DNA of 64,000 bases from Paragordius varius (Eukaryota; Animalia; Nematomorpha): assembly GCA_964247055.1 (NCBI GenBank), contig OZ176052.1, positions 186,001 through 250,000 of the forward strand, written 5' to 3'. Below the pieces are notes generated by a model. It worked only from the letters and a program-made list of their open reading frames with translations. It had not been told where the DNA came from and ran no database searches. This document shows, piece after piece, positions 11,142 to 61,230 of the stretch; within the stretch, counting starts at the first letter, position 1; each line of letters begins with the position of its first letter. Made by a program: the position numbers and the translations under genes.

Positions 11142-11179
<38 letters not shown>

Positions 11180-11184
11180 TTATA

Positions 11185-11420: not shown

Positions 11421-12754
11421 TATATATATATATATATATTGTCCTTATAATTTTAAAGCATTAATGAAATATTCTAGAACAAGGGGGGCCAACACGCGCC
11501 CAAAAAAGTTTTGAAGCCCACTAGAAATTTTAAAATAAATTTTTTTTGAAATCTAAGTAAAATCGATTTTTATAAACAAATTTTTCCACAATAAATCTTT
11601 CCGAATTTCGGCAATGAACTAACTAGTAAAAAATGTAGTTTTCACCATTTTATGTTTGTAATTTAATAAAATATTTTTGTTAATGCCCATATATTCTGCA
11701 AATAAGGGCATTCGGATTTTTAACCTCGAAATTTGGCCTGCAAAGCTATTTGCGTTGACCATCTTTGTTTTAGACAAAAGCCATAGAAGCCTGAAATAGA
11801 GAAAATAGAGGAAAAATACTATTGGAATAAACATTATTTAAAAATTTTTCACAAAAACAATATGCCGCGTCATAAAAACAAAAATAAAACTCTTTTATGT
11901 GCGGCCAATTGATTTTTTACGACAATGCAGCTTATGAAACCATTCATGTTGTACAAAATAAAGTATACAATTTATACGATTTTTCAAACTATAACTTATT
12001 AAAAATCAAGAAAATTTAAACATTTATTTGGCTGACCTTTAGAGTTTTGAGGTTAAAACATCTCTAAACTCGTATAATTTTTGATTAATGCTATTTTACG
12101 CAAAATACCTTGACCCATAGCTAAAATTTAATAATGGTCGACGCATTCATAACGCTTAAAGGATTAAATCCACAAACTAATTGAAAATATCGAACCGCGT
12201 ATTTAAAAATTAAATGGAAGCATTTATTAATTTAAATAAACCTACATGTTTTTTCCAGAATATTGCTTTAAAACACGATAAATTTTAATTATAAATAAAT
12301 TCGGATTAAATAATATTTATGTGTATATCGTCCCGCACAAAGGTTTAAGGCTCAATATAAAATGGATATCCCTAAATAGAGTTACATAGGACTTTTAACA
12401 AAACAATGTATATAGATTGATTAAATATATTTATTAGCGCAATAACAATAATTTAAGTATAGTAAAATTTTATCAATGATTACGAAGATATAAATAAAAA
12501 TTGCGTTATATAAGTATATTTTGCTAGGAGCTAGTTGACTAGAATAAACGAATTTACAAGTGTTTATAAATGAAAACGCATTTTGCATATATATATTAAA
12601 GTATATTCCACAAATAATATATATATTATAAATAAAAAGAGTATTATTTTAAAGTAAAAAAAGATGGGATAAAATAAATTTTATATAAATTGCAAGCAAG
12701 CAAAGAAAATATTTTTTTTCCTGATAATTATCGTTTCAATAGCCTCAACGCAGT

Positions 12755-15700
12755 TTATGAATATAGGGTTGAGTGACACCACTAAATATTGTAAAATAAA
12801 ATTTTAGAATGAAAATAAGGGTATAATTAAAATTATAAAAACAAAAGCTACAATTAAAAGACTTATATTTTGAATATTGAAAATTATTTTTTGTTTTGGT
12901 TACAAAATAAGGAATAAAGTATGTTTAAACACTTGATTTTACATACATACACAATCACAGTAGAAGTGTGAAATTATACGGACAAAACGTGAAAATATAG
13001 AGACAAAAATTTTTTTCTAAAAGACAACCATACTTTAATCTTGATTTTTTTTAATATAAATCACAATTACAGAATAGATATGTATATGGTAACACAATCA
13101 ATTACATACATATTTTACAATTGTTATTGAATGATTTAAATAGGAAAATTAAGGTTTAGAAAGTATGGTTGTCTTTTCGAAAAAAAATATTTGTCTTTAT
13201 ATTTTCACGTTTTGTCCGTATAATTTCAATTTTTATATTTTTACATTTTGTCCGTAGTATAATTTTAATTTTTAATGTAAAATAATTTATATGGGTAAAA
13301 TCGGATCAATAATATTTTCTCCTAACAAAAAAATTTTTTAATCTTTTACTTTTATAAATTTTATAGTCAATAATTGTTATTAAATAAAAAAACCAAACCT
13401 CATCTAAATCACATTCTGCCAAGCCATCTTCGGTGCAATAAGCTCGGAATTTCTCAATCATTCCTTTCAGTTTTATGGCGCACATAATAAAATCGTTAAA
13501 GGTAATCTACAAGAAAAATTCATACATACAGTAAAAATATGAAATTATACGGACAAAACGTAAAAATATAAAGACAAAAACTTTTGTAAGGCACAAAACT
13601 TAATTTATCCTAAACAAAACATATAATTACAATCGTAAAATACAAAATTGAATGTGTTACCAATATACAATACTTTGTAGATTTAAACAATGAGTTGTTA
13701 TATTTAATAAAATCAAGATTAAAAAGTATGGTTGTTTTTTTAAAAAAATATTTGTCTTTTTTTCACGTTTTGTCCGTATAATTTCAATTTTCAAATATAA
13801 TTTTCTTTTAAACTAAAAAAAAACTATTTTAGTAAATTCAAAATTTAAATTTTGCATATAATACCAAATTATCTTTATTGCGATAACGTAAGACCATTGA
13901 TTTATGTACGTTGGAATTTAAACTGTATCCGACTGATTGGAAGGCTTCTTTCATTTCAAACGCATTCAGGGTTCCTGAATTATCACGATCAAATTGCTTA
14001 AAAATGGCCTAAATCAATAAGATTAAAGAGTAAATTTACAATAAGAATTAAAATTATAAAAATTATTAAAAATAATTTATTTAAAAGTAAAGGATATTTT
14101 TTAAACCTTGATTTTATCTCATATAACAAACATATGATTTTGGATTGCAAAATAGGGAATAGAGATATAAATTGGAAACACCCTCAATTTTTTTTTCAAA
14201 TCATAATTGTAAAATATGGATTATGCAAAAACTCAAAACCGAAAAAAAAACATGTTTTTGTAAATTCAAATTAATCTTTTACTATTTATATTTTATTTTA
14301 TACGCATCATATCAAATAACTTACATATATATATAAAAGGAAACTTATTTAATTAAAAAATTGAAATGTGATTTTAGTAAAAATAATTATTACTTTCCAA
14401 AGTTTTATGGATTTCCACAAATCCAAAAACTCTTCCAAGCCTAATTGACCGGATTTGTCGTAATCTTTCATGGCAACCATACTGCGACACGTTTCAATGT
14501 TGAATCCTTCGAAAGATTCTAATAAAATTTCCGAAAAAATGAAAATTAATATTTGATCCATGATTTAAAGTTTAAGATATTATAAAGTATAAAACAAAAA
14601 ATTTTCTATAAGTTAAAAGACTTATATAATATCTATAAAAAAATTTTACCCCCCAAAAAATGGGTTTCCTTATAGTTTAATATATCTATAAAAAAACTTT
14701 AAATTTATATTTTCTTTGAAATATTATATTTACTAAAATAAAAAATATGTTAAAAAATTGATTAACAAAAATATCTTAAAAATATACTATCTTTCTTGAG
14801 AGCAAAATTAAGGATTTCTTGGAGTTCGTAAGGCGAAATTTCCAAATCTTCGCCGGCAATTCGATCGAAATATTCTTTAATGTTGGCATCTTGCTGTTCT
14901 TCCGTTTGAACTACTTCTTGAGGAATCTATAATTTTAAATTAAATTTTAAATTTATTTTAAAAATTTATTGTTTAATACAAGAAAGATATTAATCAATTT
15001 ATAAAAAGTGTTGCTCAATTTTCACTACAATGCACTTTAAATATTGAACAAAAATTAAAATTATAGATAAGACAAAACATTTTGAAAAGTAAAAGGTTAT
15101 AATTTCCATTTTTACCGTTTATTAAATGAAACAATGACGAAAATATTAATTTTTTACTTATTTACTCATTATGTTTTGTCTTGATATATGGTTTTATCAC
15201 AAAACATATACTTGATTTTATGGCATTTAAAAAATAAAATAATTATAAATTATATAATTTTCCAAAAAAATATTATTCTCATCTTTTATATTTCACAATT
15301 TTAACTGTAAGGAAAAAAAATAAAAGTTACTTTTTTTTAAGTTTTAATTTTAATTGTAGCTAAAAAAAGTAAAAAAAAATTACTTTTTCTTAAGTTTTAT
15401 ATTTTTACTTAATAATTTAAAAAGCAAAAAAAAGTTAATTTTCTTAAGTTTTATTTAAAAATAAAAAATAAATTTACCTTTTCCGCCATAAGCGGATTTA
15501 CACCAGTTTCCTCATCGAGTTCATTAGCATCGACTCGTTTTTCGGAAAAGACTCGAAGTAAAAACTCGGCCGCTTGATTCGGTTCAAAGGTTGAGGGCAC
15601 AATTACGTAAGAACCCTAAATTATGAAACATAAAATAAAAATAAATCAACTAAAAACAACTTTTTACATTTACTAAATTCAATAAAATTTCTTAAAATTA

Positions 15701-18700
15701 TTTTAATTGTAAATCTCCTCGAGGTAAGAAGAGAACTTATAACGAAATATAAAAACTAGTAAAATAATTAAATTACAGTTATAAATGTTTAAAAACTTAA
15801 ACTGTAAAATACCAAGTTTTTACGAGTTCAAACGTCAGTTCTAAATTATATTCGATAAAACATAATTTTGAAACCATTTATATACCATATAATCTGTGAG
15901 AGTTTAATTTTGTATACTGCAATACTGTGTATATACAAAAAAATTTACATTAAAAAATATATTATATTATACAATATCTTTCCAAAAAAAACTTATAATT
16001 ACTTTTATGCTGCTTTTTCGTTATTTGAAAAAACTAATCCGTAATTTTTCAATTTTTTATGTGTAACATTAAACTCATCAAAAAAACCAAATAAATGGTG
16101 TAAACTTTGCTAGCTAAAGTGATATATATATATATATCTTTTAACCTCTTGTCCTTTTTATGGGCGCATATATTTTCTAATTTTTACCCTAAAACTAGTT
16201 TAAAAAATCAAATAAAATTTAAAAAAATCAAATAAAATTTGGAGAAAAAATTAATAAAATTTAAAAAAAATAACAAAAATAAATTTAGAAAAAAAGATTT
16301 TTTACTTACCCGAGGTAATTTATATCGACCAGTAATTTCCCGTAAATTAATGAAAGTTGGCGAGCGAGCCACTGAAGAATTATAAGCAAAAAATTGTTTT
16401 GGTAAAGGTTCAATAGTATCTTGGGGTGATTGGACCTTTTTTTTGTGTTGTTCAAAAAGTATAAAGGAGGAATTATAAGGTGACAAAACGTAAAAAACAT
16501 AAAGACAAATATTTTTTTCAACAAAAAAACCGCTGTACTTTTTTTAAACTTGATTTTTCCTTAATATAATAACTAACTCATTAAGTGATATGTCAATTAA
16601 CAACACAATCAATAACAGTAAAAACTGAAATTATACGGAAGGACAAAACGTAAAAATATAAAGACAAATATTTTGCTTCAAAAGACACCCCCACAACCAA
16701 ATTTTTTAAAATCTTAATTTTTCACATATATAAGATACTTAGTTCCAATTTTAAAATATAAAATTTATTGTGTTAGTATTATATAACTCAATTTTACACT
16801 ATGCCATTTAAAATAACGAGTTATATTGATATAAATCAACGCTTTAAAAGTATGGTATAGTCTTTGGGAAAAAAATATTTGTCTCTTTATATTTTTAACA
16901 TTTTGTCATCCATCCGTATAATTTCAGTTTTTACTGTATATATATTTTACACAATTGTAACCAAATATCTTATATAATAAGAAATAATCAAGGTTAGATA
17001 TATTATATTTGTCTTTTTATGTTTCATCTGTTTAATTAAAGTTTTAACTCCATTTTAAAGCAAAAAAAAACGTAAATTCAAACTCAAACAAATTTCGCAA
17101 TCAAAAAAAACTTTATAAATGGCGAATCCAATAGTAACCAGATCAGCGCCATGTTTTCTCTGTTTTCTTCTGTGTTTTTGCATAAGTCCGACTATGCAAG
17201 TGCATAAATTTTCACCTTCGCCTTCATCTACTTCAGTTAGGGTTACTCCATACTGTGGATTTAACCAAAAGGTATCTGAAAAACGCATATTATATATATA
17301 ATTCATATTCACCCTTGAACAAAATTCAAATTCACCCTTAAACAATTCAAATTCACCCTTAAACAGTTTAAATTTACCCTCGAACAAAATTCAAATTCAC
17401 CCTTGAACATTTCCAATTTTCACTCTTGAACAAAATTCAAATTTACCTTTAAACAAAATTCAAATTTCCCCTTGAACAATTAATATTCACTCTTGAACAG
17501 TTCAAATTCACCCTTGAACAAAATTCAAATTTACCCTTGAACAAATTCAAATTCACCCTTGAACAAATTTAAATTCACCCTTGAACAAAATTCAAATTCA
17601 TCCTAAAAATAAATTATGTTTTTTCAGTTTAAATTTACCATTTACAGGTCAAATTCAAATTCACCCTTGAACAAAATTCAAATTCACCCTTGAACAGTTC
17701 TAATTCACCCTTGAACAAAATTCAAATTTACCCTTGAACAATTCAAATTCCCCCTTGAACAATTAATATTCACCCCCTTGAACAATTTGGCTTCACCCTT
17801 AAACAATTTAAATTCACCCTTGAACAGTTCAAATTTACCCTTGAACAATTCAAATTCACCCCTAAGTAAATTATATGTTTTTTAAGATTAAAAATTACCT
17901 ATATTTTTTTTATTTTTTTTAAAAAACAAAAATTTTGTTTAAAACTAAAATAATACACTGAAAAAATTATAAACTATGCCATAAAGATATATTTTATATT
18001 AATAATGAGTTATATTAGCTGCCCGAAAATACATAATTTATTTTTAGAAATATATTTGAATTGTTTAAGGCTGAATTTGAATTGTTCAATGGGGTGTATT
18101 TGAATTGTTTGAGGGTGAATTTGAACTGTAAATGGTATATATACAGTAAGAATTAAAACATACCTATATTCCCCTTTAAAAAAATAATTAAATTGACTAA
18201 TTTTTCCAAAACCTAACTCCCTTTTAAGTTTAAAAACCTGAATTTAAAACATTTCCCTCAACAATATAACCAAAAATTGAAAATTTAAATAAATCAAAAT
18301 ACTCGCCCCTCTAAACTTAGACACCAAGTATATATATATTATCCAAACGAATTCATTAAAAATAATGTTTTGACGTAATTTTATTAAAATAACACTCTTT
18401 AAACCTAAAAAACTCAAAATACTTGAAAATTCTTAACTCTGGAAAATTCTAAAACACACACTAGAAAGAAAATTTCATTATGTAATCATTTTTAAAAACT
18501 CTAAAAAACTACCCTAACCAAATTTAAACTCTAAAAAAATAAATTTTGACATAAAAGAAAATAATTCAATTACATAAATTGAAATTATACGGACCAAAAA
18601 GTATAAATATAAAGTCTTTTCTCAAAGACAACCATACTTTCAAAACCTTAATTATTTTAATATATCTTATTGTTTTAAACTGTAAATTATAAAATAGAGA

Positions 18701-21700
18701 CGTATATTGTTAACACAATCAATGATAAATTTTAAGATTATTATTGAATGGTTTAAATAAGATATATATTTAAAGGTTTGAAAAGTATGATTGTTGACTT
18801 TTGAAAAAAAATTTTTGTCTTTATATTTGTACGTTTTGTCCTTCCGTATAATTTCAATTTTTACTGTAAATAATCATCAAAATTTTCAATAAAACATTTC
18901 CAAAAGTCAAAAAAAAACTTTTTTTGGTTATATGTATCTCAAAAATCAAATCAAATTGAAAACAAATTCCCGCTCAAAACTTAAAAACCCTTTAAAAAAT
19001 TACCCAAAAAGTTTCGACAGCCGCCAGCATTGGCGCCAATAACCCAGCTGTCATTGTGAGTGTTCACTTCCCATTTCTTCTTGGAGGCGCCATATGGACT
19101 GTCACACCAAATCTCGGTACAGGCTTCAGGGGTTAGGTGACAAATCTCAAGTTTTTCAAAGTAACGCATAAAATCTTTCAGGGACATCCTTGAGGTAAAT
19201 TTAAAAAAATTATTTAATCGAGTTTGAAAAAACAATAAACTTAAATAAAAAAGTTTTGAATAAAAATATGGTTCTGATTCTAACAAAGTAACGTATAAAA
19301 TTCTTCAAAGTTTACCTTTGTGTAAACTGAAAAAAAAGGCAAAAATTTAATTTAGTTTAAAACATAATGAACCTTTATTGAAAAAGTTTTGAGCAAAAAT
19401 AATGGTTCTGATCTCAAGTTTTTCAAAGTAACGCATAAAATCTTTCAAAGACATCCTTTAAAGGAATAAAATATTGACAAAAATTTATTCAATTTAGTGT
19501 TTGAAAAAGGAATGAACTTATAATGAAAAAAAGTAAGTAACGCATAAAATCTTTCAAAGACATCCTTTGGGTATAAAACATTGAAAAAAATTTATTCAAA
19601 AAATATAATGTTTTTGGATAAAAAATACAGTTCTGATTTCAAGTTTCTCAAAGTAACGCATAAAATCTTTCAAAGATATCCTTTTATGTAAAATATTAAA
19701 AAAAAACAAAAATTTATCCAATTTAAAAATGATGAACTTATAATTAATTATGTATTAAAAATATGGTTCAAATCCTAAGTTTTTCAAAGTAACGCATAAA
19801 ATCTTTCAAAGACATCCTTTAGGTAAATTTTGACAAAAATTATTCAATTTAGTTTGAAAAAATAATGAATTTATATTGAAAATTAGTTTTAAAAATATGA
19901 TCCTAACTTCAAAGTAACGCATAAAATCTTAAGACATCCTTTTATGTAAAATATTGAAAAAAAGGGACAAAAATTAATTTTTATTATGTTTGCCAATTTG
20001 GTAATATTGTATACTAATTTTTAAACTGTCTTGTCTTTTTGGAGTCCCATATTATTTAAAATAAAATTAAAAATAAACTGTAAAAACAACAAAATTATAT
20101 ACCATTTTTTTGGCTCTCTTAATAATTACTATACCCCCATGAAAATAAAAAATGGGTAAAAATAACCCTAAAAAACATAAAGCAAAGATTACGATTAACC
20201 CGTATATATATATTACAGTAAAACTTGAAATTATACGGACAAAACGTAAAAATATAAAGACAAATATTTTTATCTTAAAAACAACCATACTTAAATCTTG
20301 ATTTTTTAAGTATAACTCATTGTTTTAAACAACAAACTATAAAATATACATGTACATTGGTAACACAATCAATTATATATTTTATAATTGTAAATAAATC
20401 AATTATATAAAAAAAATTTAAATTTAAAAAAGTAGAATTGTCTTTAAGAAAAAAATTTTGTCCGTATAATTTCAATTTTTACTGTAAAAATTTAACATAA
20501 AGCAAAAATTAAACTAAATACCAAAATTCACCATCAGCTTCGAAAACCAGACCGAGTTTTTTGCGTTCCTCAGCCGAAGTATATTGCCATTCAGGTGATC
20601 TAATAAAATTTACACAGGAAAAATTAATTTTAAAGTGAAAAAATATTTGAAAAATATATAATTTTTATAAAAATTACATTTTTATATTATTGATTTTACC
20701 TCTATAGTTGTGGAATACGGTAATCTTAATGTTGATTTGTAACATATATATACCATTTACAATTCAAATTCACCCTTGAACAATTCAAAATTACCCTTAA
20801 ACAACTCAAATTCACCCTTGAACAATTCAAAATTACCCTTAAACAACTCAAATTCACCCTTAAACAATTCAAATTCACCCTTAAACAATTCAATTTCACC
20901 CTTAAACAATTCAAATTCACCCTTAAACAATTCAAATTCACCCTTAAACAATTCAAATTCACCCTTAAACAATTCAAATTCACCCTTAAACAATTCAAAT
21001 TCACCCTTAAACAATTCAAATTCACCCTTAAACAATTCAAATTCACCCTTAAACAATTCAAATTCACCCTTAAACAATTCAAATTCACCCTTAAACAATT
21101 CAAATTCACCCTTAAACAATTCAAATTCACCCTTGAACAATTCAAATTCACCCTCAAATAAAATATAAGTTTTTTAAGATTAAATATTACCTATATTTTA
21201 TATATTTTTAAAAAATAAAAATTATGTTTTAAATTAATTAAAATAATACTAAAAAAATAATAAACTATACCATAAACATATATTTCATATAACAGTTCGA
21301 AAAAAACATAATTTATTTTTAGGGTGAATTTGAATTGTTCAAGGGTGAATTTGAATTGTTCAAGGGTGAATTTGAACTGTAAATGGTATATTTATGTTTT
21401 TTTAGACGAAAAAATTAGTTTAAGATAGTTTTTTTTCCTTATATAAAAACATTTTTCTAACTATGAGTAACAACATGGAAAAATATAATCAATTTTTTTT
21501 GGTTTAAAATTTCAATTGTTTTAATTCAGAAAAGAATAATATTAAAAGTAAATTATTAATAATTACTTATCACTCCAAGGACCATTCCATTCGGCTTCGT
21601 TTCCCCAAGGATTACGTAATCTTATAAGTGGAACTTTGCCTTGATTACTTTCCACCTTAAAATGTGTTAAAATTTAATTAAATTTAGTTTAATTTTATTT

Positions 21701-35334: not shown

Positions 35335-36900
35335 TTAGCTAGAAAAGAATATAGCACACTTTATCGATTTGGCAATTTGAATTTGGATTGGCAATATGAT
35401 CGATATTAGGACGAAGATGTTGAAATGCTACATATGTTTAATTTCCAATTATATCATTTAACACTTCATTATATATTCATATTTTGAATGCGATGATATT
35501 TTACGCTAAATCCCCCCCCCCAGAGTTTATATAGTAAACAAACTAATGTTTAAAAGTTGTTTAAAAACCTAAATATTAATTTCTCTTCACAAAAAACTTA
35601 GATTTTTACAGTTTTCTATAGTCCGCAATTAGCATGCAACCAAAACACGAATGAAATAAATAGCGGTTATTAGAAGTATTTTTTGGTTTCTAATCATTTA
35701 ATGCTTTTATTCTTTAGCGATCTAATTTGAATTCCAAAAAATGACGTTTGAGACGGAATTATTTTTAAAATTTAAAATAATATTTTTTATTGTTAGTCTA
35801 AAAGGCCAAATGCATTTTTATGATTGGGCTCAACATCGACATATAATATATTTAAAATAAACTAACCAAATATGTAGGGTGTTGAATCATTTGGAGCTAA
35901 AAATCTATAGCAAAATCATAGCTTATATGAATTTTTAAATTACACTAGACAACCAATTTTTCTGCCGCTCGAATTCTTTGCATTTTCTGATATTTACTAT
36001 TTAACAGTAAATCTGAAATAAATATAAATCCTCCTAAAATTTTGTATACAGTCATAAATCTTTTCTTTTGGCAAATAAATTTTTTTGTTTAGGTATTTTT
36101 ATTTTTTAAAGAAAAAAAGGAGCTCCGCGGTATTAACAATATCATATTCATCAAAAAAAGTAAAAGGAATGTGGGGAATGGCTTCGAAAATCATTAAAAA
36201 ACTGTTTAAATATAATGATAATCTAACAAGTAACACTTAATCTTAAAATATTGTTAAAGGGGAATGGTAATAAAAAAATTTAAATTTTTCAGCAAAATTT
36301 TATTACTTTTTTTGAAAAATTTTAAAGAAAACAAATCAACAACGTAAAAATTAATTTTGATATATAGAAAAAATATATTTGTTTAAAAGATATCACAATG
36401 AATAAAACAAACATTATAACGGAACCAAAGGATGTAATCATATATTCTATATGTATACCATTTACACTTCAAATTGTCCTTGAAAACTTCACGTTGGTCC
36501 TTCAACATTTCAAGTTGATCCTTAAATTTCATTAATTTTGGATTTGACCATAAATTTTGCATGATTTTATTAATTTTAAACCTAATTTTTTTGATTTATG
36601 ATATATTTATTCAATTAAAATTACTATTTTTAATTAAATAACCATTTTAAAATAATCTTATATCATTCAAGAACATTATTCAATTATCTAAACTCAAAAA
36701 GTTGACGCACATCATGCTAAATAAGATTATTTTAAGAAAGCCAAATTCTTCAGGCTAAAAATACCAATACTCATCATAAACCAGTAGCAACTACTAATTT
36801 TAACCCAAAACTGTTTGTTTCAAGGGCCGTGCACAATAACGATAAAAACTTCATAGCTCTATGACCATGTTTGCCGATGTTTGCACTTACAATAAATATA

Positions 36901-38316
36901 CCATTTCCCAGTCTAAATAAACGTCTTCCCTGTCTATCGAAACACTTCCCAATCAATCGAAACGTTTTCCCAGTCAATCCAAACATTTTCCCAGTCAATC
37001 GAAACATTTTCCCAGTCAATAAAAACATTTTCCCAATCAATTAAAACGGTTTTATTTTTGATAATAAGTATCAAAACAAGATAGAACCTTTAAACATTAT
37101 CAGCGTAATATTAGGATATTATTTTTTTATATGAAAATATTTTCTATATATTCCAATACACAATCATTATTAATTATTCTTTAAAAGCTATTTTTATTAA
37201 CTGGAAGAATATTTTATAGTTTTTTATTTTTAAGAAAATATTTAATAATTTTTTTATTTTATCGATGATTCGCATTAATATTCGGGGCTAAATTTTAAAG
37301 TCTATAGTTATGGATAATAAAATTTATAAAAATATACCATTTTTTTCTTAAAGGTCATTTAACACTGCATATTGTATCATAAACATGTCGAATTGTGTAT
37401 AAAAATACTCTTGGAAATAAATCTAAACAACACATGGTTTTAAATATGTTTTTCATTTAAAAATATTTTATAAAAAAGGATATTTTAACACAATGGCTTC
37501 GCATGCCGCATTTTTAACTCAAGCATGGCGTTCCGCATTCGTATTATATACGGACATTCATAAATAATTTATTCGATCTTAGGCATAAGTCTGTAAAGTA
37601 CAAATACAATATTTTTTTTTAATTCGTTGCCCAATTTTATAGACTCATTCAGAATCATAGCGTAAGAAATATGAATTTTACTAAGATTTTGTGGGCATAT
37701 TTTTGTATTGGATTTCCAAATTTTTCGCGGGCCATACAAAGATTCGGAAGGCCGCCTTAGGTCTCCGATGGACCAAATGATAAATATAAAAAATAGGGTA
37801 AAATCTATGTCTAAGACCCAATATGAAGTGTTAAATGACCTTTGAGATAAAAATGGTATATTTTTACAAATTTTATTATCCGTAACTATAGACTTTAAAA
37901 GTTAGCCTCGTATATTAATGCGAACCATCGATAAAATAAAAAAATTATTAAATATTTTCCTAAAAATACTTAAAAACCATAAAATATTCTTCCAGTTAAT
38001 AAAATATAGCTTTTATAGAATAAATTATTAATGATTGTGTAATGGAATATATAGGAAATATTGTCATTAAATAATTGAGATTTTTTAAAAAATAATATCC
38101 TAATGATACGCTGATAATGGTTAAAAGTTATTTTTCTATCTTGTTTTGAAACTTATCATCAAATATTAAACCGTTTTGACTGGAAAAACGTTTTTATTGA
38201 TTGGGAAAATGCTTCGATTGATTCGGAAGATGTTTTGATTGACTGGGAAAACGTTTCGATTGACTTGGAAAAGGTTTCGATTGACTGGGAAAACGTTTAT
38301 TTAGACTAGGAAATGG
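36901..38316. mobile_element. Foldback-like TIR element (family B2), ~450-bp inverted arms
   Basis: TATA|CCATTTCCCAGTCTAAATAAACGT...ACGTTTATTTAGACTAGGAAATGG|TATA. Subterminal ~21-bp repeats (TTCCCAGTCAATCGAAACGTT); the arms are inverted copies over ~36901-37345 and ~37850-38316. Confidence 0.88.
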
Positions 38317-38771
38317 TATACATTAAGAAATTTAATAGATAAATCAGAGCCATAAGAAAGCACTTTTAAAGCCACATGCGGCCCGCCGGCCGCGGTTTGT
38401 GTGCCACTTTCATAAACTATAGGCTAAAAGGAAAATGATGTACTAAAATATTTTTAAGTCTTAACTTCCCCCTCTAAAATGGGCATTTTAAAATAAACAC
38501 GAAAATTCTGCTTTCTTCGTAAATCTCGTGGGATATATATGTCAAATTATTTTTTACCATTTTGTTAGAGCGTATTTGTTATTTTAAAGTATGGAATTAG
38601 TAGATAAATGAAACATTTCTATATAATTTGAGATTAATAAATATAATTAAAATTTTGAAGATTTTACTACCTAATCGCTTTATATTTAGATTTAAATAAC
38701 TAAATATTCGCAATAACCCATTTTTCAAATAATTATTATATCTATTTTCCTCGTTGTCAGACTTATAATCA

Positions 38772-38813
38772 GTTGTTTCCTTATTCCATCCGTGTGTATC
38801 CCTTGCTTGAACC
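38772..38813 (+). promoter_or_regulatory. Pyrimidine-rich (TCT/5'TOP-like) leader of RPS11
   Basis: gtttccttattccatcc lies just upstream of the MADQ start; ribosomal protein genes typically initiate in such tracts. Confidence 0.35.
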
Positions 38814-41800
38814 ATGGCTGATCAGGTATTCATAAAATTGTTTTATTTTAAGTTTATCATTTTGTTGAAAAATATTTAATAATTCATTAATTATAATGAG
38901 TCTGCCTACTCCAAATTTTAAAAGTGTTAAAAGCGCATTCCATACCTGGTCTACGAAAAAGGATAGAAAACAACAGTTGGAAAGACTTGTCTCACATCAA
39001 TACAATTTTTATATAGCATCTTTAGATTATAAATATTTCTATGAAGACAATTGGACGATAATTTCTACACTTTCGCAATCAGCTTATGGGATAGTATATC
39101 GCGTGAGAGACGTTAAAGGCATAGAATATGCGCTTAAAATTTCGTTAAAGCAACAACATAATCATCGCATTTTTAATCAAATACCAAATCATCGCAATAT
39201 AGTTCGGCATCTTTTGACATGGAGCGAAAATGAATTTTATTTTTTACTTACCGAACTTTGTGACCATAGCCTGTCCTATACGCATTTAAGCAAAGTTGGT
39301 ACTTTGATTAGGGAAGAATTATTGCAGAAGTGGACAATTGATATTTTAAACGGCTTAAATGCTTTACATAGTGTTAATTGTGTTCATTTGGATATAAAAC
39401 CTGACAATCTTTTAATCAAAAATGGTACTTGTAAAATTGGAGACTTTGGTTTAGCTTCTATTCTTCCTAGTCACACCGGTGATTCTGATATATCTGAGAG
39501 CAATTTTCACATTCATGATGGAGATAATCGATATTTAGCTCCTGAACTTTTAAACGGACATTTCACTCTGGCAGCCGATATTTTTAGTTTGGGAGTTACG
39601 CTTTTAGAATTGGCTACAGATTTAAGTTTACCTGACTCGGGTGAGTGCTGGATAGCACTTCGTCAGGGTCAATTACCTCCCCCAGAAGTTTTAAAATCTT
39701 CCGATTTTTCTCCCCAGTTTTTTGATTTAATTCGTTTAATGCTAAATCCCGATCCGAAAGCAAGACCGACCGTTTCCCAACTTTTATATGAAGGTCGTAG
39801 TCCTTGGATACCATCTCAATCTTTTTTTCCAATCATAAATCCTTTTTCAAGTATAATAAACGCCATTTTGATAAACTCGTTTTGGGATCGTCTGATGACC
39901 TTTTTTAGGCAGACGATTGCACGCATGCCCTTATTACCTTTGAATGTGAAGCGAAAATGTTGCACGATTTTATTATTTGATTGTCCAAATTTGGCTGCCA
40001 TTAATATATTCAAAGTGATGTGTAGCGCTTTTTGGCAAAAGACTAAATCCATAAAGTACAACAATCTTACAACACCTACCTCTGCAAACATATCTCCAAA
40101 ACCAGCTGTTTTAACACCAGAATCAGAATTTAGCGGATCGGAAATGACAGATTGTAATAAACAGGCCTCACTTGTATCCCGTGGAACTAAATTGAGATTT
40201 ATGTCAACTGCTGGTAAACGGAACTTCCGGAAAACGTTAAGGTTTGAAGATGACCAACCTCCAAAATTTGATTTGTTTGATCAAAATTTTGCAGATTATG
40301 GAGAAAATATTGAAACTAATCCCAACTCTGACATTGACTGTTTTAAACCAACAGAAACCTCAAGCAGCATCTTTCGTTCTTTGTTAACGGATTTTGATGA
40401 ATCGATCTCTCTTTCATGAATATTGCATTTTAATATATTCATCATTTCTTTTTATGTGATATCAATTTATTCTATTATAAATGCTAGAATCTGTTTCTTA
40501 TTTATTATTACTATTAAAAATAAATTTTTATACTATTTTATATAAATACCGCGTGAATTTCGTTTTATAGGTTGTTGTTTTTAAACACCATATTTTGAAT
40601 AACCTTAATTTAGACTGAGAGAGCTTTTCAAAAGCAACCCGCTATCTTTCAAAACCGCAAAGCATGCGTAAAGAAATCCAAAAAAGGACTTCGGTACTAT
40701 AAAAACATTGGATTGGGTTTTAAGACCCCACGTGAGGTACAATCCTTCAATTATACTGCAATTTAAAATATTATAAATTTAAAAAATTAAAAAAAAATTA
40801 ATAAAAAACTATTATTTTTATAATTGATTTTTTCCACATAAACTATAAATTACATTTTTAATATACACTCATGAATCCTTTATTTTATCAAAAATTAATT
40901 TTTTTTTCGTTAAATAAGTATAAATATTGGTAAAGAATGGAAATTCTATGGTAATTTATATACTTTTTTGATATAATATGTTATTTCTAATACCATAAAG
41001 CTTTTATTTTATTCTTTATTTAACAAATATTTATACCAATTAACGAAAAAAAAATTATGATAAAATAAAAGATACATGACTGTAATCCAATTTTTTGCAT
41101 TTTAAATGATAACTTATATTTTAAAATATCGAGATTTAAAAAGATAATAAGGTTTTCTTTATAAAACAGACATTTTAATTTTTATTTTGTCCTTATATTT
41201 TTTTCACAGGCTATTGAAGGCACATACATTGATAAGAAATGTCCCTTTACGGGTGACATTCACATTAGAGGTCGAATCCTAACAGCCACAGTTCTTAAAA
41301 TGAAAATGCAAAGAACGATTGTGGTTAGACGCAATTATTTGCATTACATACGAAAGTATAATCGATTTGAAAAACGACATCGGAATATGAGTGTTCATTT
41401 ATCGCCTTGTTTTAGGTAATCCTTTTTTATTTAATTATTTGTGTTTAGCTTAGATTTAAAATTTTATCAAATTTTGAAGACATATTTTTTCTTTATTTTG
41501 CAATTCAATCTATAAGTTATATTATCAGGATTTGAAATTTTACTTTTTTTACATGAAATATATCTTTTAGTACAAGTTTGTCTTTATAATTAATGATAGT
41601 GAGTACACCAATTGAGTTTTTTTCAAAATTTTATGATGATATTATGTTGCATTGAATTCATATATGATTACATGCAAAGCCAATCCTCTGAATTATTAAA
41701 TGTGAATTTAAAAAGAAATTATAAATACTAAAGGACAAATATTTTTTATAAAGACAGCCATACTTTTCTAAAACCTTTTTCCATAATTTTTATAATTTTT

Positions 41801-42190
41801 TGCAACAACGCGCGATTGATTATTTAAAATTATACATTAAGGTGTAAGTTTTATAGTTTTTTATAAAGACAGCCATACTGTAAACCTTGCTTTTTCTCCA
41901 TAATTTTACTAATTAAAATTTTTTTATTTTGCAACAACGCGCGATGGTTTATTAAGAATACATTAAAGTGTATAATAAGTTTTATGGTTTGTCCAGTTTA
42001 AAAAATTTTTTATGTTAAATATTTAATTTCAATTTTTACTATAAATATGCATTTATGATATAGGGATGTCCAGGTTGGAGACATTGTCACGATTGGAGAA
42101 TGTCGACCTTTAAGCAAAACTGTTCGTTTCAATGTTCTCAAAGTGACCAAAGCTTCGGGTTCCAAGAAGAAACAATTTCAAAAATTTTAA
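38814..42190 (+). CDS. RPS11: 40S ribosomal protein S11 (uS17); exons 38814-38825, 40614-40736, 41210-41415, 42064-42190 (155 aa)
   Basis: MADQ|[14 protein letters not shown]...[14 protein letters not shown]|[15 protein letters not shown]...RGRIL...[37 protein letters not shown]|[28 protein letters not shown]...FQKF*. Exon 2 is preceded by an in-frame TAG acceptor, so an upstream exon is required. Exons 2-4 are near certain; exon 1 is slightly less so. Confidence 0.93.
38896..40419 (+). CDS. PKMYT1: Myt1 (PKMYT1/Wee1-family) CDK1-inhibitory kinase, intronless, 507 aa
   Basis: [61 protein letters not shown] (Myt1-like). A hydrophobic segment follows the kinase domain, and the C-terminal [10 protein letters not shown] resembles the RxL cyclin-binding tail of Myt1. 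Confidence 0.9.
   Translation: MSLPTPNFKSVKSAFHTWSTKKDRKQQLERLVSHQYNFYIASLDYKYFYEDNWTIISTLSQSAYGIVYRVRDVKGIEYALKISLKQQHNHRIFNQIPNHRNIVRHLLTWSENEFYFLLTELCDHSLSYTHLSKVGTLIREELLQKWTIDILNGLNALHSVNCVHLDIKPDNLLIKNGTCKIGDFGLASILPSHTGDSDISESNFHIHDGDNRYLAPELLNGHFTLAADIFSLGVTLLELATDLSLPDSGECWIALRQGQLPPPEVLKSSDFSPQFFDLIRLMLNPDPKARPTVSQLLYEGRSPWIPSQSFFPIINPFSSIINAILINSFWDRLMTFFRQTIARMPLLPLNVKRKCCTILLFDCPNLAAINIFKVMCSAFWQKTKSIKYNNLTTPTSANISPKPAVLTPESEFSGSEMTDCNKQASLVSRGTKLRFMSTAGKRNFRKTLRFEDDQPPKFDLFDQNFADYGENIETNPNSDIDCFKPTETSSSIFRSLLTDFDESISLS
40519..40524 (+). promoter_or_regulatory. Candidate intronic polyadenylation signal for Myt1
   Basis: AATAAA ~100 nt after the Myt1 stop and ~90 nt before the RPS11 exon 2 acceptor. 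The AT-rich background makes a chance match possible. Confidence 0.4.
40866..41085. mobile_element. MITE family C palindromic copy in RPS11 intron 2
   Basis: CATGAATCCTTTATTTTATCA..TTTTTCGTTAA.. versus ..TTAACGAAAAAA..TGATAAAATAAAAGATACATGACTGTA form inverted arms. Confidence 0.65.
41628..41696 (+). ncRNA. Candidate box C/D snoRNA in RPS11 intron 3, guiding 28S rRNA Um in AGGAUUGGCU
   Basis: Box C ATGATGA 41633-41639, D' TTGA 41652-41655, C' ATGATTA 41664-41670, guide AGCCAATCCT 41678-41687, box D CTGA 41688-41691, with an AATT/AATT terminal stem. Confidence 0.7.
41730..41995. repeat. ~135-bp direct tandem duplication of a family A MITE remnant
   Basis: ATAAAGACAGCCATACT...TTGCAACAACGCGCGAT...ATACATTAA occurs twice. 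Confidence 0.8.
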
Positions 42191-42314
42191 TAAATTAAAT
42201 AAATGAAAAAATATTAAATTTATACATTTAAATTTATATTATTTTATATATATAGAAAGAGTTGTAAGAGTTTGAAAAAAATGACATTGACTTTTTTATA
42301 GTTATTTAGGGATA

Positions 42315-44344
42315 CAGTAAAAAAGACAAATATTTTTCTTTCTGAAAGACAACCACACTTTTTGAATCTTGATTTTTAAAATATAACTCATTGCTCAGGT
42401 TGTTTTAAAGTGTTATATTGAAAAATATATTACTATTACAATTACCTACATTTACAGTTAAAATTGAAATTATACGGACAATATGTAGAAATATAAAGAC
42501 AAATAATTTTTTAAAAAAACCATACTTTTTATAATCCTAATTTTTCTCAATTTACAATGGTAAAATATAGAATTGATTGTGTTAGTAATATATATTTGTG
42601 TTTCAGACTTCGTCATTTAATACAATGAGTTATATTTCAATATCAAAATAAAAATATGGTTTTCTTTTAAGAAAAAATATTAGTCTTTATGTTTTTACAT
42701 TTTGTCCGTATAATTTCAATTTTTATTATATTGTATTGAATAACTTATATAGAAAAAATTAAGTTTTGAAAAAGTATGGTTGGTTGTCTTTAAAAACAAT
42801 ATTTTATATTTTTACGTTTTATCCTCCCGTATAATCTCAATTTCTAATGTAATTTAAGCTTTATTTATATTTTTATCGATTTTTCCGCTTTTCTATCGGA
42901 AATATTGAATGTGGTCCTATGTTATTTTGCAATAGTTAGTTTTTATGTAACGGTTTTGTCATTAAATAAAGCCGGGGTCGCGCGTTAAGATTTGATATAT
43001 GCAAGATAGAGAGATATTTGGGCGGATTAAATAAAAGACCGAACAGTATATAAAGCTGTTCAAAAATTTCAATGAGAGTAGTATTATGGTGTGAATCGCA
43101 AATTTATTTAAAAAAAGTCCCATGTAAGCAGTGTAACATATTTTCTATCTTATTTATAATAAGTCATCAAGTTTAAGATGTTATCTGCACATTATAGCTA
43201 ATAATATAACTTTATTGATTTGATTTTCATCTTTCCATTTTTCAATAGAAGCTGTATTAGAATTAAGATTTATATTGTATGAATTATTTTATACATGGTG
43301 GCGTGAAACAGGAATAAAACTTTAAAATTATAATAAATCTAATCAATATTCAAATATTTTATATAATTTTTTTTTGCTACTATCTGTATATATTGAAAGT
43401 CAAATGAAGTTTTAATTTCTATTTGCTATTTCTTAATAACAAAACAATTTATGAGAACATCGCTAATTATTTAATATAATATCTAAAACACTTAAAAACA
43501 ATACGATTAAAATAATTTATTGATGATAAATACTATATTATATATTATATATATATATGCATAACATTAAAAATTTAATATTGATAAATTATATATTAAT
43601 ATTGCATTTTGTATTTAATAATTATATATGTTTTGACTTGGTTAAAATTATCACAGTTCAGCATTCCCGCCAATCTCTTCCAATTTTCTGTAATATAAAA
43701 AGATTTTTATTATAAATTCTTAAGAAGAAAAATAAATTTTTGTAATTAACTAAGCTTACAGTATTACAGTAAAAATTGAAATTATACGGACAAAATGTAA
43801 ATATATAATAAACAACCATACTTTTTTAAACCTTAATTTAACCTAAAAAATCAATAATTAAAATTGTAAAATACAGAATTGAGTGTGTTAAACCAAACAT
43901 CTCTATTAGAGTTTAAAACAATTAGTTCTATTTAAAAAATCAAATTTTAAAAGTATGGTTAGTATTTTAGATAAAAAATGTTAAATTTCCGTTTTGTCCG
44001 TAAAAAATTTCAATTTTTACTGTAAATTTAATTACATTGTGCATTTTAATGGTTGTTATACGGACAAAATGTGAAAATATAAAGACAAATTTTTTTATCT
44101 AAAAGACAACCCCATACTTTTTTAATCTTAATTTATTTCAACTCATTGTTTTAATCAACTACAAAGTATAATATAGAAATGAAAATTGGTAGCACAACCA
44201 ATTATATATTTTACGATTATAACTTTATAGCTTATATGAGAAAAATCAAGGTTTAAAAAAGTATATGGTTGTCTTTAAGATAAAACTATTTGTCTTTATA
44301 CTTTTACACTTTGTCCTTCTGTATAATTTCTTCACTTTTTACTG
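42315..44344. mobile_element. MITE family A copies: nested pair ~42315-42850, plus ~43767-44022 and ~44057-44344
   Basis: Family A TIR motifs. At 42315-42850 one copy (42453-42725) sits between the two arms of another. Confidence 0.7.
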
Positions 44345-58939: not shown

Positions 58940-59740
58940 CAATCAGGAACCTGACAGGTTTGCCCAAAAAATATTTGGGCTCACCATTAAGGATTGGATG
59001 GTCGTCGATACATAATTGAATGGGTCTTAAGTCATTGGAGTGCGATTTATAATTAGGATTATTTTTATGCCAATAGAAGGTAACTTCATAGATCGGGGCT
59101 ATCTCTGATGATAGTAAGGTCGTCCGCGAAGGCCAAGCATGAGGTGAGGGGTCGATTGTTTAGGGCTACGATAATGGGGTTAATACAGAGGTTAAAGATT
59201 AGGCCGGAAAGAGGGCACCCTTGCTTAATTCCTTTAAGATAGGGGATGGGGGGTAGGTAAGGTTTTTATCGATTAAAAATTGCATAGAAGAGTTAAGTAA
59301 AATAAAATTTAAAAGGCTTTCAAGGGGTGGGGGCAGGCCAAGGGACGTTAAAAGTTTGGTGCAGACGGGCAGGGGAATCGAGTCGAAGGCGGCGGAAACG
59401 TCCAGCCATAGAAAGATGGTCTGGTGGTTCGCTGTTCGGGCCTTCGATAAGCGGTTGGAAATGTAATAATTATGTTCCAACACGCCCTCGAAGGGGGAAA
59501 ACCCTTTTTGTTGGGGGGCGATGAGATTGTGGAGGGACACATGGTGGCTGAGGAATTTATGGATGATTTTAGCAAAGATTCGATAAATTATGTTAGAAAT
59601 GGCGATGGGGCGAAAATTGGAGGGGTCGGAGGTGTCACCTTTCTTATGGATTAAGTTAGAAAAAAATTGAAGCCATGCTTTGGGGACAGTTTGGAATATA
59701 AGGCAGGCATATTTTAAAAATCTTGGAAATAATCACAAAG
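58940..59740 (-). mobile_element. Decayed non-LTR retrotransposon RT fragment (copy 1)
   Basis: WLDVSAAFDSIP, then in shifted frames [21 protein letters not shown] and CLAFADDL. Confidence 0.85.
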
Positions 59741-59769
59741 ACGCGTTTTCGCAAATATGGGACTCACCA

Positions 59770-59990
59770 TCAAAGAGGCATGGAATTCGATGGTCGTCGA
59801 TAAATAATTGAATGGGTTTAAATTTTATAACTAAGGATCCAAGACTTGAATATTTTTTTATATCAATTGAAATTAACGAGCGAGTCAGGGAAATTGTGGT
59901 TTTTATGGTGTCAGGGGGCTATCTGCGATGATAAGGTCATCTGCGAGGCCCAAACTCGAAGTCAGGGTTTTGATATTTATAGTGATATTG
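59770..59990 (-). mobile_element. Short RT fragment (copy 2)
   Basis: Similar to 59000-59140 (gggctatct..gatgataaggtc.tc.gcga = ADDLII.DSP region). Confidence 0.6.
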
Positions 59991-60149
59991 GTTTGGTGCA
60001 AAGGTCCTCTTTGGTAATGAATAAAATCTGCTAACTTTTTGTCAAAAAATAACACTGGCGTCGATTATGTATAAGGCATTCGAAGATCTTAACACCACGT
60101 CAAGCTTTATGGGAAAAAAATCCACAAATTTATTTTTAAATAAAATTTC

Positions 60150-61230
60150 AAAAACATTTTTTAAGTTGTTTAGAAGGGATAGAATATCGGTTGTAGCGGA
60201 ATATCCCTCCAAATTATCTTTTTGACTTCATTTTTACGACAATTTACCACGAATTTTCCAGAGTAAGGCGACATCTCTGATCGACAACTTTCGCCCATCG
60301 CTATCACAAATATAATTTATCGAATCTTTACAGAAATTCTCCATAAGCACCTAAGCCACCACGTGTCCCTCCACAACCTGATCACCCCCCAACAAAAAGG
60401 ATTTTCCTCTTTTTAATGGCGTGTTGAAACATAATAACTACGTTTACAACCGCCTGTCTAAAGCCCGAACAGCGAACCACCAGTCCATTTTCTTATGATT
60501 AGACATCTCCCCGTTTTCGACTCCCCCCACCCTGTCTGCACCAAACTTCTAAGATCCCTTGGCCTGCCCCCACCCGCTGAAAGCCTTTTAAACTTTATTT
60601 TACTTAATTCATCAACTCATTTCCTAATTGACAAGAATCTGACCGACCCCATCCACTACCTTAAAAGAATTAAGCAAGGGTGCCCACTTTCAGGTCTAAT
60701 TTTCAACTTTTGCATTAATCCGATCATCGTCACGCTTAAAAATCAACCTCTTGCCTCATATTTAGCCTTCGCAGACGACCTTGCTATCATCGCAGATAGC
60801 CCTGACGCCATGAGAACCGGAGTCAGTCAGACAGAATCACTCAATATCTCTTAATTCGATCGGTTTTAAAATAATATGAACCGCCTCCAACAGCTTACGA
60901 CCATTTGAATTTTCTAGCAACGATTACCTAACCCCATGCCTGCTCGATGAGCCCCGTTTGGGTAAACTTGTTGGATTGATTGTTCCGGACAAATTAGCTT
61001 TTTTATCGGTAAATTGTATCCTCTCTTTCATGACTCCTTGGCAAAAATGCGACAGCTGTTTATTAGGCTGACTAATCATCAAAAGCTCTGTTTGGAAATC
61101 GTTCTAAAATCAGATTATCTTTAATTGTTCTCATCTTCGCATAAATCTTAAGTCCCTTTTTCTCTCGCAAGGTGCAACTAACGCTTATTTCTATATTAAC
61201 ACCGATTCTGGTGGATTAACTTTCTAACCT
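60150..61230 (+). mobile_element. Decayed non-LTR retrotransposon RT fragment (copy 3, inverted relative to copy 1)
   Basis: [21 protein letters not shown]...YLAFADDLAIIADSP; nucleotide inverted similarity to 59100-59650. Confidence 0.85.

What the first reader, a model, noticed from the sequence alone, without database searches (positions are those of the whole stretch)
38814..38898. A 27-nt micro-intron and short uORF may be the RPS11/Myt1 switch
Seen: the RPS11 donor at 38826 is followed by ttttattttAAG ending at 38852, giving a 27-nt GT-AG intron (gtattcataaaattgttttattttaag), the same size class as the 25- and 26-nt introns elsewhere in this window. Whether or not it is spliced, the RPS11 start reads to a TAA at 38877-38879 ([12 protein letters not shown] if spliced), 16 nt before the out-of-frame Myt1 ATG. 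Inference: choice of proximal versus distal acceptor selects the product, and Myt1 would be translated by reinitiation or leaky scanning after the RPS11-derived uORF. Alternatively, the AG at 38852 could be a spliced-leader trans-splice site that removes the uORF start.
Basis: partly seen in the sequence, partly recalled or inferred. Interest (0 to 1): 0.78.

Follow-up and report, generated by a model that had tools for sequence, protein, structure and literature searches.

The report
Myt1 kinase gene riding behind RPS11 exon 1

Summary
The sequence facts are all correct. RPS11 exon 1 (ATGGCTGATCAG, 38814-38825) is followed by a 27-nt GT..AG segment (38826-38852). The RPS11 start reads to TAA at 38877-38879 whether or not that segment is removed. 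The out-of-frame Myt1 ATG follows 16 nt later (38896).

Real 25- and 26-nt introns exist in this window, in RPA1 and a MIT-domain gene. But none of the specific features exceeds chance:
- 48% of all GT in the window have an AG 20-35 nt downstream.
- RPS11 intron 3 carries an equally good 33-nt decoy.
- In-frame stops are expected in 67-87% of shuffles.

The layout does hold up. In Gordionus (Myt1 about 50% identical, non-coding DNA unalignable) the intronless Myt1 also lies in RPS11 intron 1, 47 nt behind exon 1, with one AG (a 43-nt candidate) before its ATG. These flanks stayed compact while RPS11 introns 2-3 differ fourfold in length.

My best reading is one shared promoter region, where splicing of intron 1 competes with polyadenylation behind Myt1 and the RPS11 ATG acts as a short uORF.

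No RNA run holds the locus, so cis-splice, own TSS and SL trans-splicing stay open. Earlier notes of this scan report three similar nested genes elsewhere in this genome.

The parts
38775..38790 (+). Pyrimidine-rich TOP-like motif (GTTTCCTT + TATTCCATC), putative RPS11 transcription start region
   Evidence: Both words recur directly upstream of the Gordionus RPS11 ATG (L001 9918-9934), in swapped order. Weak statistically: longest shared word P=0.14. The TSS role is inferred, not shown.
38814..38825 (+). RPS11 (uS17) coding exon 1: ATG GCT GAT CAG = MADQ, strong start context (A at -3, G at +4)
   Evidence: Exon 2 starts at position 2 of the Pfam Ribosomal_S17_N profile, so only a few N-terminal residues are missing. 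The same exon (ATGGCAGATCAA) is in the annotated Gordionus RPS11 model.
38826..38852 (+). Candidate 27-nt GT..AG micro-intron that shares the RPS11 intron-1 donor; unproven
   Evidence: The sequence is as described and its size class exists in the window. It is at chance level, and neither its length nor its phase is conserved in Gordionus (43 nt).
38814..38879 (+). Short ORF from the RPS11 ATG if intron 1 is not removed (21 codons; 12 if the 27 nt are removed), ending 16 nt before the Myt1 ATG
   Evidence: Gordionus equivalent: 17 codons unspliced, 4 codons (MADQ) if its 43 nt are removed, ending 5 or 1 nt before the ATG. Stops are expected by chance in 67-87% of shuffles.
38826..40613 (+). 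RPS11 intron 1 (1788 nt), almost wholly filled by the Myt1 gene
   Evidence: Donor CAG|GTATTC, acceptor AATTTAG|ACTGAG. Exon 2 is identified by Pfam and by 88% identity to Gordionus exon 2.
38896..40419 (+). Intronless Myt1 (PKMYT1/wee-1.3-like) kinase ORF, 507 aa
   Evidence: Best solved-structure hits are PKMYT1 at 5e-39, against Wee1 at 3e-23. Pfam Pkinase 6e-37. Nearest homologue is the Gordionus wee-1.3-like protein. The N-terminus is conserved from residue 2 (LPTPN...FSTKKD), so 38896 is the true start.
40420..40613 (+). Myt1 3' flank (194 nt) with a single AATAAA at 40519 and ATTAAA at 40513, followed by the RPS11 intron-1 3' splice region
   Evidence: Gordionus has a 224-nt flank with AATAAA at 11503, likewise about 100 nt before exon 2. 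AATAAA density is 3.1 per kb, so presence alone is not significant. The poly(A) site role is inferred.
40614..40736 (+). RPS11 exon 2 (41 codons, TERAFQKQP...)
   Evidence: Pfam Ribosomal_S17_N 7.5e-14; 88% identical to Gordionus.
41210..41415 (+). RPS11 exon 3
   Evidence: Pfam S17_N and S17. PDB 40S ribosomal protein S11 1.5e-37, residues about 49-116. 93% identical to Gordionus.
42064..42191 (+). RPS11 exon 4 with stop TAA
   Evidence: Pfam Ribosomal_S17 1.5e-10; 95% identical to Gordionus; boundaries.

Best explanation
RPS11 and Myt1 form one compact transcription unit driven from the RPS11 promoter region.

A transcript that starts at the pyrimidine-rich RPS11 start region has two fates. 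If its exon-1 donor (38826) is joined to the exon-2 acceptor (40613), the whole Myt1 gene is discarded as intron and RPS11 mRNA results. If that splice is not made before the poly(A) signal behind Myt1 (AATAAA at 40519) is used, the RNA ends there and becomes Myt1 mRNA.

In that RNA the RPS11 start codon opens a short dead-end ORF: 21 codons if nothing is removed, 12 if the 27 nt are removed. It stops 16 nt before the Myt1 ATG, so Myt1 would be made at a low level by reinitiation.

The 27-nt GT..AG may be used occasionally, but it is not required and is not shown.

Shown: gene identities, geometry, conservation of the layout in a second nematomorph, and compactness of the flanks. Inferred: shared start site, splicing-versus-polyadenylation competition, and reinitiation.
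For: - The same nesting occurs in Gordionus sp. m RMFG-2023. The annotated RPS11 (L001 9942-12349) encloses the intronless Myt1 (10001-11377) on the same strand.
- Myt1 is only 48-54% identical between the two species, and the non-coding flanks are unalignable.
- The donor-to-ATG interval is 70 nt versus 47 nt, and stop-to-exon-2 is 194 versus 224 nt. RPS11 introns 2 and 3 in the same gene differ fourfold (473 vs 113 nt, 648 vs 179 nt). The Myt1 flanks were therefore kept short and leave no room for a separate upstream promoter.
- The nested gene is intronless in both species. This would be expected if the host donor must not find acceptors inside it.
- The only upstream ATG in the window is the RPS11 ATG, in a strong context. 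In both species and both splice forms its ORF ends 1-16 nt before the Myt1 ATG.
- A single AATAAA lies about 100 nt before exon 2 in both species.
- Unchecked leads from earlier scan notes: three more intronless same-strand genes sit 28-30 nt or so behind host exon 1 in this genome. For one of them an RNA-like data set showed host exon 1 and the nested gene on one unspliced piece.
Against: - No RNA evidence of any kind exists for this locus.
- A 16-nt (window) or 1-5-nt (Gordionus) spacing after a uORF with a strong start codon is poor for classical reinitiation.
- A second start site a few tens of bases downstream would explain the geometry equally well without a uORF.
- The in-frame stops, the AATAAA, the AG count and the promoter words are each within chance expectation.
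- Only two species could be compared.
Confidence: 0.4

Rival explanations
1. Alternative start site. Myt1 mRNA begins downstream of the RPS11 ATG, inside exon 1 or in 38826-38895, within the same broad promoter. Such RNAs lack the uORF. If they start after 38826 they also lack the donor, so they run to the Myt1 poly(A) site. Start-site choice, not splicing, selects the product.
For: The tight conserved geometry fits a shared promoter just as well. It avoids the difficulty of reinitiating 1-16 nt after a uORF with a strong start codon. In the mammalian cholinergic locus, specific promoters for the nested gene lie within the host's first intron (PMC3053374).
Against: The 5' UTR would be under 70 nt (window) or under 47 nt (Gordionus). 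No initiator or TATA-like word is shared in the interval, and the interval is not conserved (P=0.34). In the similar loci noted earlier, only 28-30 nt are available (unchecked notes).
Confidence: 0.3
2. First reader's model. The RPS11 donor is spliced either to the proximal AG (38852, a 27-nt micro-intron) or to the distal AG (40613). Use of the proximal site consumes the donor, commits the RNA to the Myt1 poly(A) site, and leaves [12 protein letters not shown] as a uORF.
For: Introns of 25 and 26 nt are genuinely needed in two genes of this window. Earlier notes describe a 22-35 nt promoter-proximal intron class. The candidate has GTA, a 7/8 pyrimidine tract and AG. Gordionus also has exactly one AG before its Myt1 ATG (43 nt from the donor), and removing it would also delete a second upstream ATG there. 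The C. elegans and mammalian cholinergic loci use shared 5' exons with alternative splicing (PMC3053374).
Against: The pattern is at chance level: 48% of GT and 10% of GTA with a good tract. An equally good 33-nt decoy starts the obligatory RPS11 intron 3. Length (27 vs 43 nt), phase and tract quality are not conserved. In the window the splice changes neither the uORF start, its stop nor the spacing. An efficient proximal site transcribed about 1.7 kb earlier than the distal one would starve a very highly expressed ribosomal-protein gene. In the one similar locus with RNA-like data, the proposed splice was not seen (unchecked note).
Confidence: 0.15
3. The AG at 38852 (Gordionus 9996) is a spliced-leader trans-splice acceptor. 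An SL with its cap is added there, removing the RPS11 ATG, so one pre-mRNA could yield both mRNAs.
For: The sister phylum Nematoda trans-splices. The acceptor would lie 43 nt (window) or 4 nt (Gordionus) before the ATG, which are typical distances in nematodes (own knowledge). It is the only model in which a single primary transcript gives both products.
Against: No paper in the library mentions nematomorphs together with spliced leader or trans-splicing. No SL RNA or any Rfam family was found in the window plus L001, though that is only 85 kb. The layout is not operon-like, since the upstream unit is only a 12-nt coding exon. The TOP-like motif in both species suggests ordinary capped RPS11 5' ends.
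Confidence: 0.05

Closest known systems
Cholinergic gene locus (VAChT inside the first intron of ChAT; unc-17/cha-1 in C. elegans)
   Same: A complete single-exon ORF sits on the same strand inside the host's first intron. The arrangement is conserved over long evolutionary distances. The two products come from shared and/or intron-internal promoters plus alternative processing (PMC3053374).
   Different: There the two genes act in one pathway, the shared 5' exon is non-coding, and the distances are hundreds of bases to kilobases. Here the partners are functionally unrelated (a ribosomal protein and a Cdk1-inhibitory kinase). The shared exon carries the host's start codon, which would become a uORF, and the nested ATG lies only 47-70 nt behind the donor. 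Sharing of the exon in mRNA is not shown here.
Intronic polyadenylation versus splicing competition (for example the immunoglobulin mu secreted/membrane switch; U1 snRNP suppression of intronic poly(A) sites); own knowledge
   Same: One donor and one downstream poly(A) signal inside the intron, where the outcome decides which mRNA is made.
   Different: Known cases give truncated or alternative isoforms of one protein. Here the intronic product would be a wholly different protein read from its own ATG.
Retrogenes that land in host introns and borrow the host promoter or 5' exon; own knowledge
   Same: An intronless copy in sense orientation inside an intron, with expression dependent on the host's promoter.
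   Different: No poly(A) remnant or target-site duplication is visible. The event predates the split of two nematomorph lineages, and this appears to be the working Myt1 gene, not an extra copy. Whether another copy exists in the genome was not tested.
Ultra-short (22-35 nt) spliceosomal introns of this genome
   Same: GT..AG ends, 27 nt, AT-rich with a T-rich 3' part, and promoter-proximal position.
   Different: The verified ones (RPA1 25 nt, MIT-domain gene 26 nt) are needed to keep a conserved reading frame. The candidate is needed for nothing that can be read from the DNA.
Nematode SL trans-spliced operons
   Same: Two same-strand genes under one promoter, with an AG a short distance before the downstream ATG.
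   Different: In operons the upstream gene is complete and polyadenylated about 100 nt before the trans-splice site. Here the downstream gene sits inside the upstream gene's first intron. SL trans-splicing is not documented for Nematomorpha.

Membership tests
Micro-intron class (22-35 nt) of this genome | GT..AG ends and length within the class | tested here: met
   27 nt, GTATTC...TTTTAAG. Verified class members in the window are 25 and 26 nt.
Micro-intron class (22-35 nt) of this genome | Removal is required to restore a conserved reading frame | tested here: not met
   No frame depends on it. The RPS11-derived ORF ends at the same TAA with or without it, and the Myt1 ORF starts downstream.
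Micro-intron class (22-35 nt) of this genome | Same intron position, size and phase in a related species | tested here: inconclusive
   Gordionus has one AG after the donor, but at 43 nt, in another phase and with a weaker tract. The interval similarity is at chance.
Micro-intron class (22-35 nt) of this genome | Spliced junction seen in RNA | not testable with these tools
   No RNA run holds the locus. The laid runs are DNA-like, and no transcript-derived proteins were found.
Cholinergic-locus-type nested gene pair | Whole ORF of the guest gene in one exon, same strand, inside the host's first intron | tested here: met
   Myt1 38896-40419 lies inside RPS11 intron 1, 38826-40613.
Cholinergic-locus-type nested gene pair | Arrangement conserved between distant species | tested here: met
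   Same nesting in Gordionus L001. Only two species were reachable.
Cholinergic-locus-type nested gene pair | Guest mRNAs carry the host's 5' exon or start from the host promoter | not testable with these tools
   Needs 5' ends of RNA. It is inferred only from the 47-70 nt spacing.
uORF-controlled mRNA (reinitiation) | Upstream ATG whose ORF ends before the main ATG | tested here: met
   Window: 21 or 12 codons, with the stop 16 nt before the ATG. Gordionus: 17 or 4 codons, with the stop 5 or 1 nt before. Expected by chance in 67-87% of shuffles.
uORF-controlled mRNA (reinitiation) | The upstream ATG is present in the mature mRNA and is translated | not testable with these tools
   No RNA or ribosome profiling data.
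SL trans-spliced operon | Complete upstream gene with a poly(A) site shortly before the trans-splice acceptor | tested here: not met
   Upstream of the AG lies only the 12-nt coding exon 1 of RPS11.
SL trans-spliced operon | SL RNA genes and leader-bearing mRNAs in the organism | tested here: inconclusive
   No Rfam family in 85 kb and no literature link. The genome at large and RNA were not searchable.
Myt1 / PKMYT1 kinases | Protein kinase domain closest to PKMYT1 rather than Wee1, with the conserved N-terminal PTP...STKK motif | tested here: met
   PKMYT1 5e-39 versus Wee1 3e-23. Pkinase 6e-37. The motif is shared with Gordionus and a priapulid-type homologue.
RPS11 / uS17 | Ribosomal_S17_N plus Ribosomal_S17 domains across the exons | tested here: met
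   Exons 2-4 were scanned one by one. Exon 3 matches 40S S11 at 1.5e-37. The joined protein was not built.

The most novel reading that the evidence does not exclude
Horsehair worms have a recurrent, conserved way of packing genes. Intronless 'piggyback' genes (here the Cdk1-inhibitory kinase Myt1) sit 28-70 nt behind the first exon of an unrelated host gene and are expressed from the host's promoter. The decision between host and guest is made by splicing of intron 1 versus polyadenylation behind the guest, and the host's own start codon serves as a damping uORF. At this locus that would tie a cell-cycle brake to a ribosomal-protein (growth-regulated, TOP-type) promoter.
Probability: 0.35. 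Interest if true: 0.7.

Novelty: new variant of a known kind. Interest (0 to 1): 0.42.

Why it matters
If the shared-promoter reading holds, this would be a clean natural case in which one promoter and one 5' splice site yield two unrelated proteins. The host's start codon would be reused as a translational damper.

It would also be one of several such pairs in a little-studied phylum, which suggests a general rule of nematomorph gene organisation rather than a one-off. It links a Cdk1 inhibitor important in oocytes to a ribosomal-protein promoter in animals whose adults are mostly gonad.

The specific 27-nt intron claim, by contrast, adds little. It is not needed for the model and is statistically unremarkable.

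Tried and rejected
- RNA evidence from reads: the look-up of sequencing runs listed no RNA holder. The four runs laid (X1, X3, X4, X5) are DNA-like or empty, and no informative joints or loose ends fall at 38825/38853. X4 at first looked RNA-like, with no depth upstream of exon 1. It shows two haplotypes at summed even depth and 3-8% divergence, so it is divergent DNA.
- Transcript-derived proteins: the exact window Myt1 is not in the protein collection. Word searches with the N-terminal parts of Gordionus Myt1 and window Myt1 found nothing.
- More species: two further Myt1 homologue loci of unknown taxa (L002, L003) carry no RPS11 exons.
- Conservation of the donor-to-ATG interval, the promoter and the 3' flank: alignments and shuffles are at chance.
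- An ORF-flank scan to collect more micro-introns for a splice-site profile was too noisy. Only two could be validated, so no profile was built.
- An alternative RPS11 first exon close to exon 2 was rejected. Only the 38814 exon gives MADQ+TERAFQKQP, as in Gordionus.
- An in-frame fusion of exon 1 to Myt1 was rejected. The ATG is in another frame, and the only nearby AG (38899-38900) gives the wrong frame.
- The large representative-protein search was not used, because the proteins are not open questions.
- The spliced RPS11 protein was not joined. Its exons were searched one by one by reference.
Full report
**What is there.** The window is about 23% G+C animal DNA. On the plus strand lies RPS11 (uS17).
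- Exon 1 is ATGGCTGATCAG (38814-38825), exon 2 is 40614-40736, exon 3 is 41210-41415 and exon 4 is 42064-42191.
- The exons were checked one by one. Exon 2 matches Ribosomal_S17_N from profile position 2, and exons 3 and 4 complete S17_N and S17.
- Exon 3 matches 40S protein S11 chains at 1.5e-37.

Intron 1 (38826-40613, 1788 nt) is almost filled by an intronless 507-codon ORF (38896-40419). Its best solved relatives are human PKMYT1 (5e-39) ahead of Wee1 (3e-23). Its nearest database relative is the wee-1.3-like protein of the horsehair worm Gordionus sp. m RMFG-2023, so the window comes from a nematomorph. The Myt1 N-terminus is conserved from residue 2, so 38896 is the real start codon.

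**The observation.**
- The donor is GTATTC at 38826.
- A 27-nt GT..AG segment ends at 38852.
- A double stop TAATAA lies at 38877-38882 and is reached with or without removal of the 27 nt, because 27 is a multiple of three.
- Then come 16 nt and the Myt1 ATG in another frame.
- 38851-52 is the only AG, and there is no further ATG, between the donor and the Myt1 ATG.

RPA1 (minus strand) needs a 25-nt intron at 7022-6998. A MIT-domain gene (minus strand) needs a 26-nt intron at 57597-57572 to keep its frame. Earlier notes of this scan describe many more such introns in this genome. Those notes are unchecked, apart from the two I verified here.

**Is it more than chance? No.**
- 48% of all GT dinucleotides in the window have an AG that would make a 20-35-nt segment. 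With GTA and a pyrimidine-rich tract required, 10% still qualify.
- RPS11 intron 3 must be spliced over 648 nt, yet it begins with a 33-nt GT..AG of the same quality (41416-41448).
- An in-frame stop before the Myt1 ATG occurs in 87% (window) and 67% (Gordionus) of dinucleotide shuffles.
- One AG in the interval is ordinary: means are 2.6 and 2.0, with P(<=1) of 0.29 and 0.43.

**Comparative evidence.** The annotated Gordionus locus (L001, GCA_954871325.2) has the same architecture.
- RPS11 (9942-12349) encloses an intronless Myt1 (10001-11377) on the same strand.
- Its exon 1 is ATGGCAGATCAA and the donor is GTAATA.
- The only AG before the Myt1 ATG is at 9995-96, 43 nt from the donor and 4 nt before the ATG.
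- Unspliced, the RPS11 ATG reads 17 codons to a TAA 5 nt before the Myt1 ATG. With the 43 nt removed it reads MADQ-stop, 1 nt before the ATG. A second upstream ATG (9964) would also be removed.

A proximal AG and a terminating uORF are therefore available in both species. But length, phase and tract quality differ, and the interval is no more similar than shuffled sequence (P=0.34).

What is conserved is the geometry. The donor-to-ATG distance is 70 versus 47 nt, and the Myt1-stop-to-exon-2 distance is 194 versus 224 nt. RPS11 introns 2 and 3 are 473 versus 113 nt and 648 versus 179 nt, swollen in the window by high-copy repeats. Myt1 itself is only about 50% identical between the two species. 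Each 3' flank holds one AATAAA about 100 nt before exon 2. Both promoters carry the pyrimidine words GTTTCCTT and TATTCCATC just upstream of the ATG, a weak signal (P=0.14).

**RNA evidence.** None could be had.
- No RNA run holds the stretch.
- The laid runs cover introns and intergenic DNA, show two haplotypes, and give no joint or loose end at the sites in question.
- Word searches for transcript-derived Myt1 fragments were empty.
- No paper in the library links nematomorphs to spliced leaders or trans-splicing.
- No Rfam family, SL RNA included, is in the 85 kb at hand.

**Interpretation.** The compact, conserved placement leaves no room for an independent upstream promoter. I therefore take a shared promoter region as likely (about 0.8). 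Within that, three mechanisms remain.
- Most economical: transcripts from the RPS11 start either splice exon 1 to exon 2 (RPS11 mRNA), or are cleaved and polyadenylated behind Myt1 with the RPS11 ATG as a uORF (0.4).
- A second start site just downstream, giving donor-less and uORF-less Myt1 mRNAs, explains the DNA equally well (0.3).
It is not needed, because in the window the splice changes neither the uORF start, its stop nor the spacing. An efficient proximal site would also starve a very highly expressed ribosomal-protein gene.
- SL trans-splicing is least likely (0.05), because the layout is not operon-like.

Earlier scan notes report three more intronless genes nested on the same strand just behind host first exons in this genome: CTDNEP1 in RPP30, a FASTK-like gene in MBTPS2 and a C/EBP gene in DNAJC17. 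One of them had an RNA-like piece that is unspliced across the host exon. These are unchecked leads, but they shifted my weight toward the unspliced reading and toward a genome-wide rule.

**Comparison with known systems.** The closest known layout is the cholinergic gene locus, where a single-exon VAChT sits in the first intron of ChAT. It is conserved from nematodes to mammals and has multiple promoters and alternative splicing (PMC3053374). The differences here are the unrelated functions of the partners, the shared exon carrying the host's start codon, and the 47-70 nt spacing.

**Verdict.** The real feature is a conserved piggyback arrangement, a new variant of a known kind, and its mechanism needs RNA data.

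Noticed in passing
window 7022-6998 (-) and 57597-57572 (-): There are two frame-restoring ultra-short introns. One is 25 nt in RPA1, after the Rep-A_N domain exon. The other is 26 nt near the 5' end of a MIT-domain gene. RPA1's first intron is 72 nt.
   Followed up: partly
window 41416-41448 (+): The obligatory 648-nt RPS11 intron 3 begins with a 33-nt GT..AG segment with a good T-rich tract. It is a micro-intron look-alike, and using it would truncate RPS11. It is a useful negative control, or a possible unproductive splice.
   Followed up: no
window 40758-41150 and 41675-41805: A repeat family inside RPS11 introns 2 and 3 has summed contig depth of roughly 10- to 700-fold that of neighbouring bins in the DNA runs. 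Related 'aaagacagccatact' copies occur at about 42320-42800 and 43760-43990. These are MITE-like elements that inflate this species' introns relative to Gordionus.
   Followed up: no
window 38170-38300 (+) and 36870-37075: There are tandem arrays of an approximately 21-nt unit (GATTGACTGGGAAAACGTTTC-like) in opposite orientation about 1.1 kb apart, upstream of RPS11. A G+C-rich palindrome (GCGGCCCGCCGGCCGC) lies at about 38378-38396.
   Followed up: no
window 38943-40415: Myt1 coding sequence is highly polymorphic between runs and haplotypes, with 3-8% differences. There are three-base insertions or deletions near the C-terminus (behind 40248, at 40341, and behind 40410). RPS11 exon 3 also shows several differences.
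   Followed up: no
window 13841-19304 (-): Calpain-like gene exons are present (a protease-domain exon, a domain-III-like exon, and an EF-hand exon), separated by ordinary and repeat-filled introns.
   Followed up: no
window 59199-60854 (both strands): There are reverse-transcriptase (RVT_1) ORF fragments in the G+C-richer 58-64 kb part of the window. One minus-strand reading (60055-60031) would need a 25-nt GT..AG removed to stay open.
   Followed up: no
L001 9964-9999 (+): Gordionus has a second upstream ATG between the RPS11 donor and the Myt1 ATG. It gives an 11-codon ORF ending in the TGA 1 nt before the Myt1 ATG. The window species has no ATG in the corresponding interval.
   Followed up: partly
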